A DNA stretch of 64,000 nucleotides, filler included, from Octopus bimaculoides (Eukaryota): NCBI RefSeq assembly GCF_001194135.2. It is 7 parts of 6 records of this genome, joined end to end, with 100 filler letters (N's around TTAATTAATTAA, not from the genome) between each part and the next. Parts side by side here need not be neighbours in the genome. Positions count along the whole stretch, not along the records: positions 11,430 to 43,042 come from NC_068982.1; 6 more parts are not named here. One strand, given 5' to 3'. Each line of letters begins with the position of its first letter. Positions within the stretch are counted from its first letter, which is position 1. Shown here one piece after another: positions 11,486 to 41,400 of this stretch. The translations under genes and the position numbers were made by a program. Below the pieces are notes generated by a model, which was not told the origin of the DNA, made no database searches, and was given only the letters and a program-made list of their open reading frames with translations.

Positions 11486-12299
11486 CATGTACATATCAAT
11501 AACAGTAATAATCTTCGGATGTAATTTATAAATATTTTATGCATCGATACGCGCGTTTCCACAAATTACATGTTTTTTAAGATCATAGTCCGTATTCCTG
11601 AAATTATTACAGTGCAGTCCGTAGTATCGATGGACACAACGTAGATCATGTTTATGCTTTCATTTCTAAAATTTATTTTAAATAAATGCAAGCACACTCG
11701 CGACACATTTTTAAACAGTTTATTTTAAAAGTAGCTTTGGCTGAATCTATTCGTTATACATCAAAGTATGTGTTATTTCTCGCATGAAATTACGGCTTGT
11801 GTATTAAACTCTACGTTTGTCTGTTCAGTGACAAACAGAACATAGACTAAACACGAGGAAATAATTTTTAAAAATCAAGTGAAATCGTTGCATTGGTCAT
11901 AAAATATACTATGAGCCACGTAGACCTTTCTCCAATACGTATGACTATACTCGCAGACTTTAATATTACATTAATGTATAAATTACAGATGAATTTTCGA
12001 TAATTGCCATTTCTATTTCCTATGTGTAGAGAACAAATATTCATGGAGTGTGTAGAGAATGTAGTTGATTAGAAATACATGGAAAAGATTTTATAGATTA
12101 TGTGATGAAAACTATAATATATTGGGGTAATGGACACCAATAAACATAGCTATTTCAAGTAATTTTGCGATAGTTTCCATTATATCATACATATTAAATA
12201 TATGTTAAGTATATGTTATTAGGGTAAAAACTAAAAACAAAATCAAGAGATTTGGTGAATATAATTTGAAGAAAAGCAACAAAAATTCAATAGGTTACA

Positions 12300-12387
12300 G
12301 CAGTACGTACGTTTCGTACAAACTTCATTTATTCATGTAGTGAGAACACTACATAAAATGTGTAATGAAAATGTACTCTTCAGCTGC
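12300..12387 (-). ncRNA. Type I hammerhead ribozyme, intact core
   Basis: Minus strand: GCAG-CTGAAGA-GTAC...GTAC-GAAAC-gtac-GT-A-CTGC; predicted cut between 12304 and 12303. Confidence 0.85.
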
Positions 12388-12614
12388 ATAATGGAATTTC
12401 ATTTTAGAAAGTCATTTTGTAGATGTATGCAAAAAACAAGAGTAAGAGAAGAAAAAATACCATCTTGGCTGGGCTGCTGTTTAACAGTTTAGTAAACAGC
12501 AGCTCAGCTTAGACTGTTAAATAGCAGCCCAGCCAAGATGGTATTTTTTTCTTCTCTTACTCTTGTTTTTTGCATACATCTACCAAATAACTTTCTAAAA
12601 TGAAATTCCATTAC

Positions 12615-12702
12615 GCAGCTGAGGAGTACATTTTCATTACATATTTTATGTAGTGTTCTCACTACATGAATAAATGAAGTTTGTACGAAACGTACGTACT
12701 GC
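12615..12702 (+). ncRNA. Type I hammerhead ribozyme, intact core
   Basis: GCAG(12615-18)-CTGAGGA(12619-25)-GTAC..long stem II..GTAC(12683-86)-GAAAC(12687-91)-gtac-GTA(12696-98)-CTGC(12699-702). Helix III ACGTACGT is palindromic. Confidence 0.87.
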
Positions 12703-14722
12703 TATAACCTATTGAATTTTTGTTGCTTTTCTTCAAATATATATATATATGTATTCAAATAATCAGAAAATGGAGAAAACTTTGGATCAACAAACAAAAA
12801 GATATCACCGCATCGGTTGATTATTATTTAATACAAAGCCTGACATAAAGTTTTCTCCGTTTTCTTATTATTTAAATTTGATCCCTGATAAACGTTTGTT
12901 TATTCTGTTGTTACCTACACCCTANNNNNNNNNNNNNNNNNNNNNNNNNNNNNNNNNNNNNNNNNNNNNNNNNNNNNNNNNNNNNNNNNNNNNNNNNNNN
13001 NNNNNNNNNNNNNNNNNNNNNNNNNNNNNNNNNNNNNNNNNNNNNNNNNNNNNNNNNNNNNNNNNNNNNNNNNNNNNNNNNNNNNNNNNNNNNNNNNNNN
13101 NNNNNNNNNNNNNNNNNNNNNNNNNNNNNNNNNNNNNNNNNNNNNNNNNNNNNNNNNNNNNNNNNNNNNNNNNNNNNNNNNNNNNNNNNNNNNNNNNNNN
13201 NNNNNNNNNNNNNNNNNNNNNNNNNNNNNNNNNNNNNNNNNNNNNNNNNNNNNNNNNNNNNNNNNNNNNNNNNNNNNNNNNNNNNNNNNNNNNNNNNNNN
13301 NNNNNNNNNNNNNNNNNNNNNNNNNNNNNNNNNNNNNNNNNNNNNNNNNNNNNNNNNNNNNNNNNNNNNNNNNNNNNNNNNNNNNNNNNNNNNNNNNNNN
13401 NNNNNNNNNNNNNNNNNNNNNNNNNNNNNNNNNNNNNNNNNTATATATATATATATATATATTGTATAAATTTATATATCAATATATTGTATATATGTAT
13501 ATATAAATATATATATATACATACACATATATAATGTGTTTGTGTTTGTGTATGTGCGTATATATAAATATATGTGTGTATATAAGTGTGTATGACTTTC
13601 TACTTAAATTGAACCCCGCCTAATCATTTTTGTGTCTACTCTGAAAAGTTATGTCTACGTAAGCTGTATTACTTCTAGAGAGATGATCGTATGCATGGAA
13701 AAGTTAGTAGGTGAATACTGTTAGAAAAATGCTAAAACAGGTTGTCAGACTAATTTCCTTAGAGTATTATATTTCATCTTTCAAAGTTCTTCATTGAAAT
13801 CTCATTGAAGTTGTCATCTCACCTAAATCTCTCGGCGTAGAATAAAATTTCCCCAACATGTCCCGATGTCGAATACAATTACTTATTCTTCAAGCAAATA
13901 ATAACATCGGATATTAAAAATCATCTTTCTTTCTTATTTCATAATATAAAATATTATGGAACGGTTATAACTTATGAAATACTTGGAGCTGCTTCACTCT
14001 AAATGAAACCTGATTTAGTACATCTGTGGTCAATGAGGTTTTAGCTATGATCACAATAACCCTGCATATCAGGGGCTATTTGATATCATGTATTCTCCCT
14101 TACTTCACACTAGATTGTTGTCATCGATGAGACATGGCTGATCTATTTTCACTTTTGCTGAGTGAACACAAAGAGGTTTTTACTCTTGTTGTTCCTGTTC
14201 TCGACACACTCCTCATCACCTTAGGTCTGGCAGTTGAAGCCATCTTGATAGTTTTGAACTAACTTACCACTACATCATATAATGCTATCTCTCTTATTTA
14301 AGAATGTGATTTGTCATTCTGGTTAGTATTTCTGTATATACACTTAAGGTAAGCAAACACATTCTGAATTGTGAGTGTAATTTTCTAAACTGACATCGTT
14401 ATTCAAGTAACACTTAAATATATTACTTGGTGATAAGTAAATAGGCTACGATAAATATTCGTTTATCAACAACGAGTATCACAATTAATCAAAATGACAC
14501 AGGCTTGTAACTATTTAGATAAAATGCTAATGAACAGCGCTGTACAGCGATAATTTGTTGTCTGTAAATATTCAAGCTTGTCACTCATAGACATATCCAT
14601 ACCCACACCCATGTATATATTTGTGTGTACATACACATATACATATGCACACACATATATATATAACAATAATAATAATAAAAAGTGTATATATATATGT
14701 GGGGGGGCGTGTGTGTGTGTAT

Positions 14723-17760: not shown

Positions 17761-18259
17761 NNNNNNNNNNNNNNNNNNNNNNNNNNNNNNNNNNNNNNNN
17801 NNNNNNNNNNNNNNNNNNNNNNNNNNNNNNNNNNNNNNNNNNNNNNNNNNNNNNNNNNNNNNNNNNNNNNNNNNNNNNNNNNNNNNNNNNNNNNNNNNNN
17901 NNNNNNNNNNNNNNNNNNNNNNNNNNNNNNNNNNNNNNNNNNNNNNNNNNNNNNNNNNNNNNNNNNNNNNNNNNNNNNNNNNNNNNNNNNNNNNNNNNNN
18001 NNNNNNNNNNNNNNNNNNNNNNNNNNNNNNNNNNNNNNNNNNNNNNNNNNNNNNNNNNNNNNNNNNNNNNNNNNNNNNNNNNNNNNNNNNNNNNNNNNNN
18101 NNNNNNNNNNNNNNNNNNNNNNNNNNNNNNNNNNNNNNNNNNNNNNNNNNNNNNNNNNNNNNNNNNNNNNNNNNNNNNNNNNNNNNNNNNNNNNNNNNNN
18201 NNNNNNNNATATATATATATATATATATATATAAATAGTAAATGAGTACATGCATATAT

Positions 18260-22351: not shown

Positions 22352-23178
22352 CAGGTTGCGGTGAATATATTGTCGTCTAAATTACGCACAAATGAAAATA
22401 ACACCGGCATCTCATTTTAACAGATATGTTTACCAAAATTACAAAAAAACAAAAAAAAAATATCTTGAAATACTAAAAAGTAAATTTATTCAATAAAATT
22501 GCCATCGGCTTCAACCACGGCCTCCAGACGTCTTCGTAATCTCCTACGACCTTTCTTTAAGTCGGTGAATGCTGCTATAATCCTTGCATTCAGTTCATCT
22601 TCGCTGTTACAAGGAGTTCTGTTGGTCTGTCACACAGCTGCACCCCACACATAATAATCAAGGGGGTTGCAGTCTGGGGAGTTAGATGGCCAGATATTAG
22701 GATTGATGTGGTCGCAGAAATTGCCTGACAGCCATGACTGGGTTCTCCTGCTTGTATGGCATGTTGCATAGTCCTATTGCCTGGCACTTAATGAAGACCT
22801 CCGCGTTCAGTGTGAGGCCTCGTGGGTAGATGAATGGAGGCATAACTTCGCCATCACTAGTGATAACGTTAAACACCATGATGTTGACTGGATGTTTAAT
22901 TTTTATCACTCTCGGTACATGTCCTCAGATTGCACTGTCCTCAGATTGACAGCTAAACACTCTGAAATGTTTGTATTGGAGCTTTCGGCTCTAATGCTAA
23001 GCTGTACAACCAGTATGTTGTTTCCAATTTTCTGGCGGAGCGATTTGCGTCATGGTGTTCTGTTTCTCACAGATTGTGCCCAACTAACCCTACTATGCTG
23101 TGTAGTCGACAAAATCAAAAACAAACAATGCGCAAAATTATAAATATAAAATGGTGACAAATTACCCATCGCACCCTG
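22352..23178 (-). mobile_element. Internally deleted Tc1/mariner element, likely DD37D (maT-like), with TIRs
   Basis: TA-CAGGTTGCGGTG... at left and ...CATCGCACCCTG-TA at right. Minus strand encodes HPVNIMVF..ITSDGEVMPPFI and IWPSNSPDCNPLDYYVWGA. Confidence 0.8.
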
Positions 23179-23396: not shown

Positions 23397-24268
23397 NNNN
23401 NNNNNNNNNNNNNNNNNNNNNNNNNNNNNNNNNNNNNNNNNNNNNNNNNNNNNNNNNNNNNNNNNNNNNNNNNNNNNNNNNNNNNNNNNNNNNNNNNNNN
23501 NNNNNNNNNNNNNNNNNNNNNNNNNNNNNNNNNNNNNNNNNNNNNNNNNNNNNNNNNNNNNNNNNNNNNNNNNNNNNNNNNNNNNNNNNNNNNNNNNNNN
23601 NNNNNNNNNNNNNNNNNNNNNNNNNNNNNNNNNNNNNNNNNNNNNNNNNNNNNNNNNNNNNNNNNNNNNNNNNNNNNNNNNNNNNNNNNNNNNNNNNNNN
23701 NNNNNNNNNNNNNNNNNNNNNNNNNNNNNNNNNNNNNNNNNNNNNNNNNNNNNNNNNNNNNNNNNNNNNNNNNNNNNNNNNNNNNNNNNNNNNNNNNNNN
23801 NNNNNNNNNNNNNNNNNNNNNNNNNNNNNNNNNNNNNNNNNNNNNNNNNNNNNNNNNNNNNNNNNNNNNNNNNNNNNNNNNNNNNNNNNNNNNNNNNNNN
23901 NNNNNNNNNNNNNNNNNNNNNNNNNNNNNNNNNNNNNNNNNNNNNNNNNNNNNNNNNNNNNNNNNNNNNNNNNNNNNNNNNNNNNNNNNNNNNNNNNNNN
24001 NNNNNNNNNNNNNNNNNNNNNNNNNNNNNNNNNNNNNNNNNNNNNNNNNNNNNNNNNNNNNNNNNNNNNNNNNNNNNNNNNNNNNNNNNNNNNNNNNNNN
24101 NNNNNNNNNNNNNNNNNNNNNNNNNNNNNNNNNNNNNNNNNNNNNNNNNNNNNNNNNNNNNNNNNNNNNNNNNNNNNNNNNNNNNNNNNNNNNNNNNNNN
24201 NNNNNNNNNNNNNNNNNNNNNNNNNNNNNNNNNNNNNNNNNNNNNNNNNNNNNNNNNNNNNNNNNNNN

Positions 24269-26050: not shown

Positions 26051-26296
26051 NNNNNNNNNNNNNNNNNNNNNNNNNNNNNNNNNNNNNNNNNNNNNNNNNN
26101 NNNNNNNNNNNNNNNNNNNNNNNNNNNNNNNNNNNNNNNNNNNNNNNNNNNNNNNNNNNNNNNNNNNNNNNNNNNNNNNNNNNNNNNNNNNNNNNNNNNN
26201 NNNNNNNNNNNNNNNNNNNNNNNNNNNNNNNNNNNNNNNNNNNNNNNNNNNNNNNNNNNNNNNNNNNNNNNNNNNNNNNNNNNNNNNNNNNNNNNN

Positions 26297-29704: not shown

Positions 29705-30090
29705 ATTCGTTCGTTCATTCATTCATTTATTTATTCGGTTCTCATTGTGCCTTCTGGCACTTGAGGTGACAGCAAGATCATTCCACCTTTTAACACTGAA
29801 AGCGTTCTTGAGAGCTTGTTTCATTGCTAACCCCCTGCTTTTAAGATTTTTTGCTATTATTCTCCGCCACATTTCTTTTGGTCACCCACGTCTTTTTTTA
29901 CCTTGTTGAATGCATTGCAAAGCGATCCTGACAATTGAATTCGGTTTATAGCGACAAACTTGACGCAACCATTTCCATCTCCTTGCTTCAATAGTTTCTC
30001 TTAATGGTTTCACGTTAGCTTTGCTGTGTAGTTGGCTAGTCGAGATCATATTCGGCCAGTAGAGCTTATTTAAACCAGAGTTCAACTCCT
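29705..30090 (-). mobile_element. RTE-like LINE 3' remnant
   Basis: Minus strand EARRWKWLRQVCRYKPNSIVRIALQ..QGKKRRG resembles the RTE C-terminus; (GAAT)n-like tail. Confidence 0.65.
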
Positions 30091-32735
30091 ACAGTTAAAG
30101 TAAAGAATATCGAGTAACTTGATCCATGCTGTAAATTTATCTGTAATTTCCTGTATAACTGCAGTTTAAGGGATACTTGTTACTCTATTATTGAATATCG
30201 ACCTGAGTTTGGAAACATTTCTAAAATGCAACTAACAATGCAAGTGGAGTTTAATGTTTTCTCTTAATCGAAAAATTCGTTTAAGAAAATATAGTATGTT
30301 TCACCCTCTGCACAAGTTAGAACAACACTGAGAGAATGCAATGTTTTAACACGAAAGCGGAAAAGAGTATAATGTTAATCATGCTTATGGCATTGTCTTA
30401 TGTAATTGATCGTGACAAATGAAAAGAGGGAAGCTGATTTCGTTGAATAAGTAAAATAGCACGCGAAACTTATTTCAAATACTTTGGAATTACGTAATAC
30501 TTTGAAAGTGGAACCTATACACAAAATGATTTTGCAAAATACATTCAAACTACTACCTTTTTTATTGTTTTGTTGGTATAGAATGTGTAGCCGGTAGTTC
30601 ATTATCTATAATGAAATACAAGGTATGATACATGTACTCAAGAGAGTTATCTAAATTACTTTATTAAATGATAATACAATAAGCAAAAAAAATATCGCAA
30701 TTCCTTAATCTCTCTACATAAATATATTTACGCAAAAAAATATTAATACACACATACACAAACTACTATATGTGAGCTGAACTATATTTCCACAATATCA
30801 ATTACACCGAGTGAGAAAGTAATTGAATCGATACGTTGGATGTTCAAAGCTCTGACTCTTATATGGTTCTGTGCATCGGCTTCTAAATAGCTACAACCGA
30901 TTAGGAAAGATCTTTACGCGGCAGCATTATAGAAATCATGGTTATTTCATATTGAATGAATACTGAGCGTAGTTCATATATAATTCAACATCTTTAATCA
31001 ATAACTAATTGATTCCATTTATTACAAAATGTCACATATTTGATGGCAAGGGTATTGATGAATTAAATTATGGTTATTTCTATAGTTACTACTCAAATTA
31101 AATCTCATGTTTATCATTAATTATTTATTGGTGCGTTATTATTTAAATTCTATACTTTAGTACAGAATATATCTATAGATTTTTCTCCTTACTCTATGGA
31201 ATAAACAGATATAAACCAGTATTCATCGTGAGAAAATAAAGGAGAGATTGAGTAGGAGCAAATTCATTATGTTGGAATTTCATTAGTAACGAAGAAAAGT
31301 TGAAATCGTCCATGGTGTCATTGCTTGCGAACGTTGCTTTATTAACATCTGATTTCTTTACTAGTACATTAACAGTGTATTATTTCAGTACTACCTTACG
31401 TCATAGAATTTGTCTACAGGTAGCAATCTATGAAATATTAAGGTGTAAATATATTTACTTGTAAACAGTATTTTCGTGGACATAAAATGAAGGATGAATC
31501 TAACTAGATTGAATCCCGTTGGAATTCCTTGAACAAACAAATATATTCGTTAACAGACAATTATAATTAAGAGCTTAATTAAATCGTATTGGCCAATTTA
31601 CAAATTTTAGCAACTACTTCAACTAAGTGTAGTAATTATTATAGATGCGGACCACAGTCTAACATTCCTGGAAAATTTCTCCTCAGCTATGTTCTATCAC
31701 TGTTTGTTTTTCAGCTCCTATTTTCAACTGGGGGCGCGACACTTCTTGTCACTTGTATTCCTCTGCACTCTAGAGCTGCTGTCTCTATCCATTGTCAAAC
31801 AGATGATCATCTGCTCAGCCATGGCGTTGTCTACCAGGTTGAACTGCTGTACTCCCACAAGAAATATACTGGTTTATGAAGGTTGACTTCTTTTCGTATA
31901 TCTCCTTTATTTTCTCCACGAAGAATATTCACTTAAATCTGATTGTTTCATACAGTAATGTTAAAACTCTATAGATATATTCTGGGCTATAGAGTGGAAT
32001 TAAAATATTAGTACACCAGTAATTAATATTAAATATGAGATTTAATTTGAGTCGTAACTATAGAAATGATAATTATTTCAGTCATCAGTACTCTTGTCAT
32101 CAGGTAATTAATAATTTATTTAAACTCAGTTTCGATCTCAGCTTGTATTTGATATCTTATAACTGGTTCACTAAGAATAATATAAAAGACAAACTTATAT
32201 CGCTATACAATATACAACATGCGAAATAGTTGAGGATCGTAAATAGGTATTTAGTAAAAATTCGCAGAACTCTTGTCTGAAATTCAATAACGTTGAAATA
32301 ATAATTAATAGTGAAATTAGCAAGAAAGGTTTAATTAATCATTCTCTTTCAGATGGGGTACTCTCTTAATATTTCAGAGATTGGGCATATTTAGTAAATG
32401 GGTATATCCGTTATTAAATATATAAGTATACTAAGTTTCATACATGATAATTAATTTCGGTATGAATGAAAATTCTTCTGAATTCAACGCTGGTCATGCT
32501 TCTCTGAGTCTACTTGCAGGACATTTGCTTACTAACATTATAAAGAATGAGATATGGGATACGATCAATAAATAATGAAGGCTAAGATGTTGCATATTTG
32601 AAATATGCTAAGATATTGGCAATGAAACATTTATATCAATTGCCGTAGAACGAAGGTTATTAATGTTTATTCTGGTATTGTCTAATCAGATAATTATTTA
32701 TGGTGTATTGTAAGTTTATGCTAAACGTAAGTCTA

Positions 32736-33628
32736 CGAGGTCTGATCAAAAGGTATCCGGACTATTAGCATAGTAACAACGCTAAATCTTGCAGAGTAAA
32801 GCCGCTAAGTACAGATTGACCTTAAATTCTGTTGTACATGCGCATTCTAGCATTCTAGCATTCTAGCTCAATTTCGCTGTTTACAGGACTGCATGGAAGT
32901 AAAATGCGTAGCGTGTGATCGACGCATTGACCATGACAGAAACAGTTGTCATTGCGATACCGGCTCAGAGGCCTATGCAAAGTTGCAGAAAGTGTTTGGA
33001 GAGGAGTGTACGAACCGCACACAAGTGTACGGTTGGTTCAGACGTTTCCAAGATGGCCGAAAAATGTTGATTTTGACGAACGTTCTGGGAGACCTGCAAC
33101 CAGTAGAACTGAAAAAGACATTACAAATGTGCGTGCAGCTGTAAGAAGTAATCGTGGAATCACCATCCATGAATTATCAGAGGATGTGCAGATTAGTTAC
33201 GGTTCAGTTCAGTCCATTATCACTGACGATTTGGGTATGAGACGCGTGTCTGCCAAATGTGTGCCGAAACTGCTTTCAGCTGACCAAAATGAGACTTGGG
33301 TTTCAGTTGCACAAGATCTCCTTGATCGTGTCGAGAAGGATGAAAAATGTTTGAAAACTTTGCTTCGGCCTCTGAATAGGCATCGCCGAGCCTTTGACAA
33401 AATTTGATACAAATTCTCTGCTCAACTTACTCTGTCGAGGTCAATGCGACGGTCACACGCTATACACCTTACTTCCAAGTACTGCTGTAAACAGCGGAAG
33501 TAAGAACGTTAAGACCTAGTGCGCATGTACAGCAGATTTCAAGATCAATCTGTGCCTAGTGGCTTTACTCTGCGAGATTTAGCTTCGTTACAATGGCAAC
33601 AGTCCGGGTACTTATTGATCAGACCACG
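32736..33628 (+). mobile_element. Internally deleted mariner with both TIRs and TA TSD (893 bp)
   Basis: TA-CGAGGTCTGATCAAAAGGTATCCGGACT ... AGTCCGGGTACTTATTGATCAGACCACG-TA. HTH region VYGWFRRFQDG / SGRPATSRT..VRSNRGITIHELS..LGMRRVSAKCVPKLL; catalytic domain deleted. Confidence 0.9.
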
Positions 33629-34233
33629 TATGTCACTAACGTAATGAAAGACGAAGCACGTTGCTTGCTTTTCTTGACGATACGAGAATTTTCTATAGAA
33701 CGGAATATATAAAACTGTCGTATATTAGCATTCACATAAAAAATTCAACAGAAGATTTTAGCACAATTACATGTTTGGGGCAAATATTAATCACAGTACA
33801 GTTTTGATTGTTCAGATTTTAAATCTGAATTCGCTTCAGTAGTTTGACTTTACCCATCAACTCAGATGAACTCATATGAACTCGCTTAACAATTCATTGG
33901 TTTCTTGCAACCTTTCGGTTTACCATTGCTATTGTTATATGGTTTCAGCACAAAGAAGAAATAGAATCATACGTTCATTTTATTCATTTCTCTTTAATAT
34001 TTTACTCAAAGTAGCTGACGTAGCATGTGTAGAAAATTAGACTTCCAACTGATTCATGCAACCACACTCACTTTCATACACACACATAAGCACGCACATG
34101 TGTATGCATATATGAGTGTGTGTTCATATATATATAAGCACTCACACACATACACACACACATATATATATATATATATACATATATTCACACACACATA
34201 TATATATTTACATACATATTTTGACACATATAT

Positions 34234-35059: not shown

Positions 35060-35400
35060 ATTGTCTAAAGTCAAATGCGTTGGGTTGGTCATATGGGCAG
35101 GATGGACGATGTTTGTCTGCCCAAGAGATTGTTTCATGGAACGCTTTCAAATAAAAAGCGGTCAAAACTTAAACCAAAGAAGCTATTTAAATATGTGGCT
35201 GAAGATAATTTGAGGTTTCTGAATATGGGCAATTGGATTTCTTCGCAAAGAACAAAACAGGCCGGCGAACGTAGTGTAGATTTTAAGAAATCCTTGTGAA
35301 AAGAAGCAACCAGAAAGATTACAGAAGATTTCACTTGTGGTTTTTGGATGCAATGTGAGCAACAGAGCATAGATTTGAGCTGGTACCCTTAATCACTAAC
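35060..35400 (+). mobile_element. RTE-like LINE C-terminal remnant
   Basis: MRWVGHMGRMDDVCLPKRLFHGTLSNKKRS..KKLFK resembles the LRW.GHV.RM...LPK..FYG motif. Confidence 0.7.
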
Positions 35401-40600: not shown

Positions 40601-41400
40601 TACATGTATATATATTCTTTGTATTATTACATTATTGAACGCACACGTCCTATTTTACAAGTAAGTCTACTATTATTCTGACGTGACTATCTTTCTATCT
40701 ATCTATCTATCTATCTGTCTATCTATCTATCTATCTTTCTATATATTTATCTATCTGTCTTCCTCCATCTTTCTATCTATACCTCTGTCCTGGNNNNNNN
40801 NNNNNNNNNNNNNNNNNNNNNNNNNNNNNNNNNNNNNNNNNNNNNNNNNNNNNNNNNNNNNNNNNNNNNNNNNNNNNNNNNNNNNNNNNNNNNNNNNNNN
40901 NNNNNNNNNNNNNNNNNNNNNNNNNNNNNNNNNNNNNNNNNNNNNNNNNNNNNNNNNNNNNNNNNNNNNNNNNNNNNNNNNNNNNNNNNNNNNNNNNNNN
41001 NNNNNNNNNNNNNNNNNNNNNNNNNNNNNNNNNNNNNNNNNNNNNNNNNNNNNNNNNNNNNNNNNNNNNNNNNNNNNNNNNNNNNNNNNNNNNNNNNNNN
41101 NNNNNNNNNNNNNNNNNNNNNNNNNNNNNNNNNNNNNNNNNNNNNNNNNNNNNNNNNNNNNNNNNNNNNNNNNNNNNNNNNNNNNNNNNNNNNNNNNNNN
41201 NNNNNNNNNNNNNNNNNNNNNNNNNNNNNNNNNNNNNNNNNNNNNNNNNNNNNNNNNNNNNNNNNNNNNNNNNNNNNNNNNNNNNNNNNNNNNNNNNNNN
41301 NNNNNNNNNNNNNNNNNNNNNNNNNNNNNNNNNNNNNNNNNNNNNNNNNNNNNNNNNNNNNNNNNNNNNNNNNNNNNNNNNNNGTATGTATGTATATATA

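What the first reader, a model, noticed from the sequence alone, without database searches (positions are those of the whole stretch)
12264..12738. 475-bp palindrome with an intact-looking hammerhead on each strand
Arms of ~228 bp are nearly identical around an 18-nt spacer. Plus: GCAG-CUGAGGA-GUAC(long stem II capped by AUGUAGUG-uucu-CACUACAU)GUAC-GAAA-C-guac-GUA-CUGC. The minus copy has CUGAAGA, so the core difference falls exactly at the tolerated N7 position. Stem I extends past a 1-nt bulge (consensus TTAC/GTAA). The plus ribozyme is sense to the ERG gene, so if this is still intron it could cut the pre-mRNA at 12698. In such a transcript the whole palindrome could instead fold as a ~228-bp duplex that sequesters the ribozyme and would be an ADAR or Dicer substrate. 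This suggests a possible folding- or editing-dependent switch (inference).
Basis: partly seen in the sequence, partly recalled or inferred. Interest (0 to 1): 0.9.

Follow-up and report, generated by a model that had tools for sequence, protein, structure and literature searches.

The report
Inverted pair of hammerhead retroelement copies
The 475-bp palindrome with a hammerhead ribozyme motif on each strand is real, but it is most likely two short copies of a ribozyme-carrying retrotransposon inserted head-to-head, a common and already described arrangement in animal genomes rather than a gene-regulating switch.

Summary
Window 12264-12738 is a near-perfect palindrome: arms of 228 and 229 nt, 8 substitutions and 1 indel, and an 18-nt centre. 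Each strand carries a complete type-I hammerhead (HHR) motif, at 12615-12702 (+) and 12387-12300 (-). The only core difference is at N7.

Both copies align end to end with Rfam Hammerhead_1. They score only 16 bits against a 34-bit cut-off because helix II carries a 53-nt insert. Helix III is two pairs capped by the palindromic loop GUAC, so ACGUACGU is self-complementary. This is the form published for animal HHRs of Penelope-like elements (PLEs) and non-LTR retrozymes.

Each HHR lies near the 3' end of its arm, followed by a 36-nt tail. The copies are joined 5'-to-5', and the unit abuts a (TA)n tract. Together these match the published signature of PLE insertions.

My best reading (about 0.6) is two head-to-head copies, 228 and 247 nt, of a short HHR-bearing PLE or retrozyme-type retroelement. 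I could not retrieve any related copy or RT/GIY-YIG ORF, so family membership is inferred.

I found no ERG exon in the piece. In a read-through transcript the hairpin (-362 kcal/mol) would swamp the HHR fold (-23). This is a new member of a known kind, of low to moderate interest.

The parts
12264..12491 (-). Left arm: a 228-nt copy of the element, with its sense (HHR) strand on the minus strand. Its 3' end is at 12264 and its 5' end at 12491.
   Evidence: about 96% reverse-complementary to 12510-12738.
12492..12509 (+). The 18-nt centre. Best read as the extra 5' end of the plus-sense copy, which makes that copy 247 nt (12492-12738).
   Evidence: Direct reading: 12493-12517 is an imperfect direct repeat (19/25) of 12518-12542. 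TRF does not call this repeat.
12510..12738 (+). Right arm: a copy of the element with its sense (HHR) strand on the plus strand. Its 3' end is at 12738.
12615..12702 (+). Type-I hammerhead motif, plus copy. Stem I 12615-18/12699-702; CUGAGGA 12619-25; helix II 12626-86; GAAA 12687-90; helix III 12690-97 with loop GUAC; A17 at 12698.
   Evidence: sequence; constrained fold, -23.1 kcal/mol; Rfam RF00163, model positions 1-45/45, 16.0 bits.
12300..12387 (-). Type-I hammerhead motif, minus copy. CUGAAGA 12383-12377; GAAA 12315-12312; predicted cut between 12304 and 12303.
   Evidence: -23.0 kcal/mol; RF00163, 1-45/45, 16.1 bits.
12698..12699 (+). Predicted self-cleavage site of the plus copy (after A17).
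   Evidence: Position follows from the core alignment. Cleavage itself was not tested.
12630..12682 (+). A 53-nt structured extension of helix II, including an 11-bp hairpin capped by UUCU.
   Evidence: In one search the Rfam model has 6 nt at this position.
12703..12738 (+). A 36-nt 3' tail after stem I of the plus copy. Its mirror, 12264-12299, is the tail of the minus copy.
   Evidence: The length matches the 30-40 bp 'tail' reported for PLE insertions (PMC8557442, PMC11167929).
12739..12752 (.). (TA)n tract directly abutting the insertion. The left flank ends in AATATA. A possible 3- or 5-nt duplication (ATA or ATATA) is uninformative in this context.

Best explanation
The locus is an insertion made of two copies of one short, non-coding, hammerhead-bearing retroelement. 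The element is of the kind associated with Penelope-like elements (a PLE pseudo-LTR fragment, or a non-autonomous 'non-LTR retrozyme' or SINE-like derivative). One copy is 247 nt (12492-12738, + sense) and the other is 228 nt (12491-12264, - sense).

The copies are joined 5'-end to 5'-end, so the two 3' ends (HHR plus a 36-nt tail) face outward into an AT/(TA)n-rich target.

The likely mechanism is inferred from published PLE biochemistry. The PLE RT-endonuclease nicks both strands of an AT-rich target and primes reverse transcription from both, starting at an internal site a short way downstream of the hammerhead. Two cDNAs of the same short RNA then grow toward each other and are joined in the middle, which produces a palindrome.

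The hammerheads are the element's own processing motifs. They are built to work in element transcripts, with a self-complementary helix III that allows a double-hammerhead between two copies of the same polarity. Both are still intact simply because the insertion is young: the arms differ by about 4%.

At this locus they most probably have no host function. Any read-through transcript folds into a roughly 230-bp hairpin in which the ribozyme is sequestered.
For: Shown by tools:
- The palindrome and both complete cores are present.
- Rfam Hammerhead_1 aligns end to end with both copies. The consensus helix III ACGcgCGU is matched by ACGUACGU, and the score deficit coincides with the 53-nt versus 6-nt helix II insert.
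- Helix III is 2 bp plus the palindromic tetraloop GUAC, and G10.1-C11.1 is present.
- The monomeric HHR fold is not the minimum free energy (MFE) fold: -23.1 versus -25.9 kcal/mol (+) and -23.0 versus -30.0 (-). The competitor is a GUACG-AAA-CGUAC hairpin that buries GAAA.
- The double-hammerhead of two like copies reaches -60.8 kcal/mol. That compares with 2 x -23.1 for two monomeric HHRs and is within 1.3 kcal/mol of the dimer MFE.
- No poly(A) is present at the arm ends, and a (TA)n tract lies at the junction.
- The motif is far above chance.

From the literature:
[quoted passage not shown] They sit in PLE pLTRs or as thousands of solo copies, and pairs of HHRs 100-700 bp apart on opposite strands were seen in S. 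mansoni (PMC4209133).
- PLE insertions are 5'-truncated, often with an adjacent inverted 5'-truncated copy forming inverted repeats. They carry a 30-40 bp tail, have the HHR near the 3' end, and show a (TA)n/microsatellite target bias (PMC8557442).
- A purified PLE protein cleaves and extends both DNA strands, prefers AT-rich DNA, and starts reverse transcription internally, downstream of the HHR (PMC11167929).
- Retrozyme units are about 170-400 nt, and invertebrate ones have a 2-bp helix III with a tetraloop (PMC7229834).
- Retrozymes derive from PLE pLTRs, and about 43% of Xenopus copies lie in introns (bioRxiv 10.64898/2026.07.22.740005).
Against: - There is no second copy of the element and no RT or GIY-YIG reading frame anywhere in the 31.6-kb piece.
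- No relative was retrievable from the collections on hand, which are prokaryotic, viral or metagenomic. Family membership therefore rests on resemblance, not homology.
- The unpaired nucleotide between A9 and 10.1 that is typical of PLE min-HHRs is absent.
- The 53-nt helix II insert is larger than the published PLE and retrozyme examples I could read.
- No tandem arrangement is present.
- The near-equal arm lengths need an extra assumption: both cDNAs reached, or nearly reached, the 5' end of a short RNA.
- The host organism is not identified. The only pointer is a mariner fragment 65% identical to an Octopus sinensis protein.
- The target-site duplication cannot be read in the TA repeat.
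Confidence: 0.6

Rival explanations
1. A DNA-level palindromic element or event. This could be a MITE or foldback-type DNA transposon whose long terminal inverted repeats happen to derive from an HHR-bearing repeat. It could also be a palindrome created by fold-back repair or replication of a single solo HHR copy.
For: The whole unit is a clean palindrome with sharp ends. The same piece holds other TIR-type elements: 111-nt inverted repeats at 32734-32844/33520-33630 around a mariner HTH_48 remnant, and 31-nt arms at 12753-12877. The flanks allow a short duplication (ATA or ATATA).
Against: The termini do not resemble Tc1/mariner ends, and a clean TA duplication is not present. No second copy lies within 31.6 kb. 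The 3'-end HHR plus 36-nt tail geometry and the (TA)n target are specifically what PLE insertions show (PMC8557442). The centre is asymmetric: one copy is 18 nt longer. That fits two separately made copies better than a fold-back of one.
Confidence: 0.17
2. Assembly artefact. The palindrome was created by a short-read assembler joining two oppositely oriented copies of a dispersed repeat, or by a chimeric read.
For: The piece is a draft assembly with five internal N gaps, one of which starts 186 nt downstream, at 12925. PMC8557442 warns that tandem and inverted PLE structures cause problems in short-read assemblies.
Against: The arms are not identical: they differ by 8 substitutions and 1 indel. 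The centre is asymmetric. The palindrome lies inside a contiguous 1.5-kb stretch with unique flanks on both sides. Simple chimeric artefacts give 100% identical arms.
Confidence: 0.1
3. One reading: the sense hammerhead cuts the host pre-mRNA, and the choice between palindrome folding and ribozyme folding, possibly modulated by ADAR editing, acts as a regulatory switch.
For: Both cores are intact. A hairpin of about 230 bp would be a generic ADAR/Dicer substrate (established knowledge). Invertebrate 2-bp helix III hammerheads can cleave as monomers (PMC7229834).
Against: No ERG exon was found in the piece. The hairpin at -362 kcal/mol compares with -23 for the HHR fold, and the complementary arm is transcribed first. 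Core intactness is explained by the young age of the copies, and the absence of core hits is not significant. There is no conservation or expression evidence. Thousands of intronic HHR copies exist in other animals without such a role (bioRxiv 10.64898/2026.07.22.740005).
Confidence: 0.03
4. A DNA copy (retro-copy) of a rod-shaped, viroid-like RNA that carries hammerheads in both polarities.
For: A self-complementary rod of about 475 nt, in which the plus HHR pairs with the complement of the minus HHR, is formally the layout of the hammerhead arm in viroid-like RNAs with ribozymes of both polarities (established knowledge).
Against: The two halves are near-identical copies of one sequence, whereas a rod that evolved as such would be imperfect. 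A 96% perfect duplex is not what replicating rod RNAs look like. The unit is not permuted or longer than unit length. The PLE explanation covers the same facts and has direct precedent.
Confidence: 0.03

Closest known systems
Hammerheads of Penelope-like elements (pLTR HHRs) and their truncated or solo copies (Cervera & De la Pena 2014, PMC4209133; Craig et al. 2021, PMC8557442; Frangieh et al. 2024, PMC11167929)
   Same: Type-I topology with a short (4-bp) helix I and a long helix II. Helix III is small and palindromic, so a dimeric form is possible, and G10.1-C11.1 is present. The HHR lies near the 3' end and is followed by a 30-40 nt tail. The target is AT-rich/(TA)n. An inverted copy is joined at the 5' end. 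HHR pairs on opposite strands a few hundred bp apart have been reported.
   Different: No RT/GIY-YIG ORF or pLTR pair is present here. The extra nucleotide between A9 and 10.1 is absent. The helix II insert (53 nt) is much longer. Both copies are very short (228 and 247 nt) and nearly equal in length, so the unit is an almost perfect palindrome.
Metazoan non-LTR retrozymes and classical animal satellite or SINE-like hammerhead repeats (newt satellite 2, Schistosoma Sm-alpha, mussel and coral retrozymes; PMC7229834, bioRxiv 10.64898/2026.07.22.740005)
   Same: Type-I HHR with helix III of 2 bp plus a tetraloop, as in invertebrate retrozymes. The unit length falls within 170-400 nt. The sequence has low GC content and is non-coding.
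   Different: Retrozymes are defined by head-to-tail tandem repeats and circular RNA products. Here the two units are head-to-head, so one transcript never carries two ribozymes of the same polarity. No circular RNA evidence is available.
Rfam Hammerhead_1 (RF00163)
   Same: Full-length alignment to model positions 1-45. Every core position and the palindromic helix III are matched.
   Different: The score is 16 bits against a gathering score of 34, so by Rfam's own rule this is not a called member. The helix II loop is 53 nt against 6 in the model.
Intronic inverted-repeat hairpins (for example inverted SINE pairs) as ADAR/Dicer substrates
   Same: A read-through transcript would form a near-perfect duplex of about 230 bp.
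   Different: This is a generic property of the arrangement. No transcription, editing or small-RNA data are available here.

Membership tests
Hammerhead ribozyme, type I | Conserved core: C3 U4 G5 A6 N7 G8 A9, G12 A13 A14, the A15.1-U16.1 pair, and H17 (not G) before the scissile bond. | tested here: met
   Both copies carry every core position. N7 is G in the plus copy and A in the minus copy. H17 is A.
Hammerhead ribozyme, type I | Three helices around the core, with helix I open-ended. | tested here: met
   Helix I has 4 bp, plus 3-4 more past a 1-nt bulge. Helix II has a 4-bp base plus an extension. Helix III has 2 bp plus the loop GUAC. The constrained folds are feasible at -23.1 and -23.0 kcal/mol.
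Hammerhead ribozyme, type I | Reaches the Rfam RF00163 gathering score (34 bits). | tested here: not met
   There is no hit at gathering score or at E<=10 over 601 nt. Narrow searches give 16.0 and 16.1 bits, with E of 0.17 and 0.15.
Hammerhead ribozyme, type I | Mg2+-dependent self-cleavage giving 5'-OH and 2',3'-cyclic phosphate ends. | not testable with these tools
   This needs in vitro transcription and cleavage assays.
Hammerhead ribozyme, type I | Tertiary contact between loop 1 and loop 2, which supports fast cleavage. | tested here: inconclusive
   A U bulge in stem I and an internal loop 4-5 bp into helix II are present. No canonical loop motifs could be checked.
Dimer-type metazoan HHR (PLE/retrozyme class) | Helix III of 1-2 bp capped by a 2-4 nt palindromic loop, giving an extended helix III in a double-hammerhead. 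| tested here: met
   ACGUACGU is self-complementary. The double-hammerhead reaches -60.8 kcal/mol, against 2 x -23.1 for two monomers. The criterion is taken from PMC4209133.
Dimer-type metazoan HHR (PLE/retrozyme class) | An unpaired nucleotide between A9 and 10.1 (a feature of PLE min-HHRs). | tested here: not met
   A9 is followed directly by G10.1, which pairs with C11.1.
Penelope-like element | An ORF with a telomerase-like RT and a GIY-YIG endonuclease, flanked by pLTRs. | tested here: not met
   No such ORF is present in 11430-43042. Published work says most genomic PLE HHRs are solo or truncated copies, so this does not exclude PLE origin.
Penelope-like element | Insertion signature: HHR near the 3' end, a 30-40 bp tail, an AT/(TA)n target, and an inverted 5'-truncated partner. 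| tested here: met
   36-nt tails at 12703-12738 and 12264-12299. (TA)n at 12739-12752. The copies are joined at 12491/12492. Criteria are taken from PMC8557442 and PMC11167929.
Penelope-like element | Sequence homology of the arm to a pLTR of an autonomous PLE in the same genome. | not testable with these tools
   Neither the host genome nor Repbase/Dfam is available. No relatives were found in the collections on hand.
Non-LTR retrozyme | Head-to-tail tandem repeats of about 170-400 bp, each with a type-I HHR. | tested here: not met
   The unit size fits (228 and 247 nt). However, the two copies are inverted, and no tandem copy exists in the piece.
Non-LTR retrozyme | Expression as linear and circular RNAs. 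| not testable with these tools
   No RNA data are available.
MITE / foldback DNA transposon | Terminal inverted repeats with a fixed target-site duplication, and many copies sharing the same termini. | tested here: inconclusive
   Inverted repeats are present. The duplication is unreadable in the TA repeat (ATA or ATATA are possible, a clean TA is not). Copy number cannot be tested.

The most novel reading that the evidence does not exclude
The palindrome is not inert. It could be a retro-copied, rod-shaped, viroid-like RNA with hammerheads of both polarities. Alternatively, it could be a locus transcribed outward from its centre, so that each arm releases a ribozyme-processed RNA. In that second case read-through transcripts would give a long hairpin that feeds ADAR or siRNA pathways. 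Either way it would be a ribozyme-plus-dsRNA module with a host or selfish function.
Probability: 0.04. Interest if true: 0.75.

Novelty: new member of a known kind. Interest (0 to 1): 0.25.

Why it matters
Hammerhead motifs of this type occur in thousands to over 100,000 copies in many animal genomes. They belong to Penelope-like elements and their non-autonomous derivatives, so one more intact pair is not surprising. The locus has modest value in two ways. First, it is a very clean example of the head-to-head insertion product expected if a PLE enzyme primes cDNA synthesis from both target strands. Second, it is a hammerhead variant with an unusually long helix II that standard Rfam scanning misses. 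If the host is a cephalopod, which I did not establish, I found no paper in the held library that describes hammerhead ribozymes in octopus. Cataloguing this family could therefore add to the record for that clade.

Tried and rejected
- Rfam at gathering score over the whole piece, and at E<=10 over 601 nt, found no hammerhead. It returned only sub-threshold miRNA-like hits (for example MIR1507, 38.8 bits against 73). Any long hairpin produces such hits, so I rejected them as spurious.
- I looked for other copies by blastn of the palindrome against the piece and by a loose CUGANGA...GAAA scan. Neither found any.
- I searched for relatives in several ways, and all returned zero. One was the translated antisense frame of an arm against the 5.8-billion-protein database. 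The others were two HHR DNA patterns against metagenome contigs, viral contigs and GTDB genomes. These collections hold essentially no animal genomes, so the negative result says little.
- I tried to identify the organism. An exact look-up of a 179-aa ORF was not on record. A mariner fragment gave at best 68% identity to an unnamed ENA protein and 65% to an Octopus sinensis protein. That is only a weak pointer to a cephalopod or mollusc.
- I searched for ERG exons by tblastn with ETS, PNT and KCNH domains written from memory. There was no hit better than E about 1.
- A Pfam scan of ten TE-like reading frames found only HTH_48.
- tRNA and tandem-repeat scans of the locus found nothing, so the element has no tRNA-derived SINE head.
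- A first double-hammerhead constraint crashed because I had written it as a pseudoknot. I redid it with helix I in trans.
- Supplementary sequence files for the PLE papers are not held.
Full report
OBSERVATION

The sequence at 12264-12738 is a near-perfect palindrome. The left arm is 12264-12491 (228 nt) and the right arm is 12510-12738 (229 nt), around 18 central bases (12492-12509, GTAAACAGCAGCTCAGCT). The arms differ at eight substitutions and one indel. The substitutions, given as right-arm/left-arm positions, are 12512/12489, 12522/12479, 12584/12418, 12589/12413, 12614/12388, 12623/12379, 12642/12360 and 12704/12298. The indel is a 1-nt length difference in a T/A run (12545-12551 versus 12451-12456).

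Each strand carries a complete hammerhead motif. On the plus strand:
- Stem I is GCAG (12615-18) paired with CUGC (12699-702).
- CUGAGGA is 12619-25.
- Helix II is GUAC (12626-29) paired with GUAC (12683-86), around a 53-nt structured insert capped by AUGUAGUG-UUCU-CACUACAU.
- GAAA is 12687-90.
- Helix III is A12690-U12697 plus C12691-G12696, closing the loop GUAC.
- A17 is 12698.

The minus copy is the mirror image (position p maps to 25002-p), with CUGAAGA at 12383-12377 and a predicted cut between 12304 and 12303. The stem-I extension is fully paired only in the minus copy (UUAU/GUAA). The plus copy has a C-A mismatch (UUAC/AUAA).

IS IT MORE THAN CHANCE?

A full descriptor required 4-bp stem I, CUGANGA, 4-bp helix II, GAAA, A15.1-U16.1 plus at least one more pair, H17, and the stem I 3' strand. 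It finds exactly these two sites in the 28.9 kb of non-N sequence on both strands. The expectation is 0.003 sites per first-order Markov simulation (1 of 300 simulations had any hit). The two sites are copies of each other, so this is one event, at p of about 0.003 for a window of this size.

Rfam does not call the motif at gathering score or at E<=10 over 601 nt. When only the 107-nt motif is searched, Hammerhead_1 (RF00163) aligns over its whole length (model positions 1-45/45) to both copies, at 16.0 and 16.1 bits with E of 0.17 and 0.15. The alignment matches every core position. The model's palindromic helix III (ACGcgCGU) is matched by ACGUACGU. The obvious cost is the 53-nt insert where the model has 6 nt. 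The motif is therefore a real type-I hammerhead by anatomy, but it is not a member by Rfam's own cut-off.

FOLDING

For the isolated 107-nt RNAs, the hammerhead fold is not the minimum free energy (MFE) fold:

| RNA | Hammerhead fold (kcal/mol) | MFE (kcal/mol) |
|---|---|---|
| Plus copy | -23.1 | -25.9 |
| Minus copy | -23.0 | -30.0 |

The competitor is a GUACG-AAA-CGUAC hairpin that buries GAAA. ACGUACGU is self-complementary, so two like copies can form a double-hammerhead with an 8-bp helix III. That structure reaches -60.8 kcal/mol, within 1.3 kcal/mol of the unconstrained dimer MFE and far below 2 x -23.1.

The whole palindrome folds as one hairpin of -362.5 (+) or -361.5 (-) kcal/mol. 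In a read-through transcript the antisense arm is made first and the duplex can zip outward from the loop. By inference, the ribozyme would be sequestered before it is complete. A single transcript of this locus also never contains two hammerheads of the same polarity, so the dimeric form is not available in cis.

WHAT IT MOST LIKELY IS

The literature describes exactly this kind of motif.

- Cervera & De la Pena (PMC4209133) state that most metazoan hammerheads are type I, with a helix III of 1-2 bp capped by a small palindromic loop, and that they work as dimers. They sit in the pseudo-LTRs of Penelope-like elements (PLEs) and, far more often, as thousands of solo copies thought to be truncated PLEs. 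In Schistosoma mansoni, pairs of such motifs were seen 100-700 bp apart on opposite strands.
- Craig et al. (PMC8557442) describe PLE insertions as strongly 5'-truncated. They often have an inverted 5'-truncated copy abutting the 5' end, a 30-40 bp tail at the insertion end, the HHR near the 3' end, and a bias for microsatellite targets such as (TA)n. The authors also warn that these structures trouble short-read assemblies.
- Frangieh et al. (PMC11167929) show that a purified PLE protein cuts and extends both DNA strands, prefers AT-rich DNA, and starts reverse transcription at an internal RNA site downstream of the hammerhead. This accounts for the tail.

The present locus fits on each point. 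Each hammerhead lies near the outer (3') end of its arm and is followed by 36 nt with no poly(A). The two copies meet 5'-to-5'. The unit abuts (TA)n (12739-12752), and the left flank ends in AATATA.

The 18-nt 'spacer' is best read as the extra 5' end of the plus copy. The stretch 12493-12517 is an imperfect direct repeat (19/25) of 12518-12542. The two copies are therefore 247 and 228 nt and are joined directly at 12491/12492. Both sizes fall in the 170-400 nt range of animal non-LTR retrozymes (PMC7229834), which a 2026 preprint derives from PLE pLTRs (10.64898/2026.07.22.740005). The near-equal lengths are most simply explained if both cDNAs ran to, or nearly to, the 5' end of one short RNA. 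That step is inference.

LIMITS OF THE ASSIGNMENT

- I could not find another copy in the piece.
- There is no RT or GIY-YIG frame. The reading frames were inspected by eye, and Pfam was run on only ten selected frames, which gave a single mariner HTH_48 remnant.
- There is no tandem array.
- The collections available are prokaryotic, viral or metagenomic, and they returned nothing.
- The unpaired base between A9 and 10.1 that is typical of PLE min-HHRs is missing.
- The helix II insert is unusually long.

Membership in the PLE/retrozyme world is therefore a well-supported inference, not a demonstrated homology. I put it at about 0.6.

RIVALS

- A DNA-level palindrome (MITE, foldback, or fold-back repair of a solo copy) is not excluded, at about 0.17. 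The short duplication cannot be read in the TA repeat, and TIR elements are present nearby.
- An assembly artefact is possible in this gap-rich draft, at about 0.1. The nearest gap starts at 12925. However, the arms differ at nine sites and the centre is asymmetric, which argues against it.
  - I found no ERG exon in the piece (queries from memory).
  - The hairpin outcompetes the ribozyme by more than 300 kcal/mol.
  - The intact cores are expected for copies only about 4% diverged. The chance that nine differences miss the roughly 35 constrained positions is about 0.2.
  - The differences go in mixed directions, with no one-sided A-to-G bias.
  - In Xenopus, about 43% of retrozyme copies lie in introns, so intronic copies are commonplace (preprint above).
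- A retro-copied viroid-like rod with ribozymes of both polarities is formally compatible but has no positive support, at about 0.03.

Invertebrate hammerheads with a 2-bp helix III can cleave as monomers (PMC7229834). An isolated arm may therefore well be active in vitro. That would not rescue the switch model.

CONTEXT

The piece is AT-rich and full of TA/CA-type microsatellites. It has five assembly gaps and decayed transposon remnants. The organism was not identified. A mariner fragment is 65% identical to an Octopus sinensis protein. PLEs are abundant in coleoid cephalopods (PMC8967140, PMC13282606), but I do not treat the host as established.

VERDICT

The locus is a new member of a known kind: hammerhead-bearing PLE or retrozyme-type retroelement copies in the documented inverted arrangement. 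Interest is about 0.25.

Noticed in passing
window 12753-12877: A second, unrelated small inverted-repeat unit lies 15 nt downstream of the palindrome. Its 31-nt arms are 90% complementary around 63 nt (I9). It is possibly a MITE, and it is separated from the palindrome only by (TA)n.
   Followed up: no
window 32734-33630: An element of about 900 bp is bounded by 111-nt inverted repeats that are 84% complementary (I20). It encloses a Mos1-type HTH_48 transposase remnant at 32851-33141. This looks like a decayed mariner-like DNA transposon.
   Followed up: partly
window 22489-22924 (-): The reading frames contain WPSNSPDCNPLDYYVWG, which by eye looks like the end of a Tc1/mariner DDE domain. 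Pfam gave no hit at E<=0.01 for the 47-aa fragment.
   Followed up: partly
window 35069-35296 (+) and 29885-30088 (-): These short frames (e.g. MRWVGHMGRMDDVCLPKRL...) look by eye like the C-terminal end of LINE ORF2 proteins. Pfam does not confirm this.
   Followed up: partly
window 12925-13441, 17761-18208, 23397-24268, 26051-26296, 40794-41383: There are five runs of N (assembly gaps), most of them flanked by TA/TG-type microsatellites. The palindrome sits in a contig of only about 1.5 kb between the piece edge and the first gap.
   Followed up: yes
window 12420-12583: Rfam gives sub-threshold microRNA-precursor matches (MIR1507, 38.8 and 35.0 bits against a 73-bit cut-off; also MIR5294 and mir-129) on the inner part of the palindrome. 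Any long hairpin produces these, and I do not take them as evidence of a miRNA gene.
   Followed up: yes
window 31120-31230 / 31917-32027: Another pair of 111-nt inverted repeats, 76% complementary and 686 nt apart (I22). It is possibly a further TIR element.
   Followed up: no
window 12493-12542: An imperfect 25-nt direct repeat (19/25) lies at the 5' end of the plus-sense copy. It shows that the 18-nt 'spacer' belongs to that copy. TRF does not report it.
   Followed up: partly
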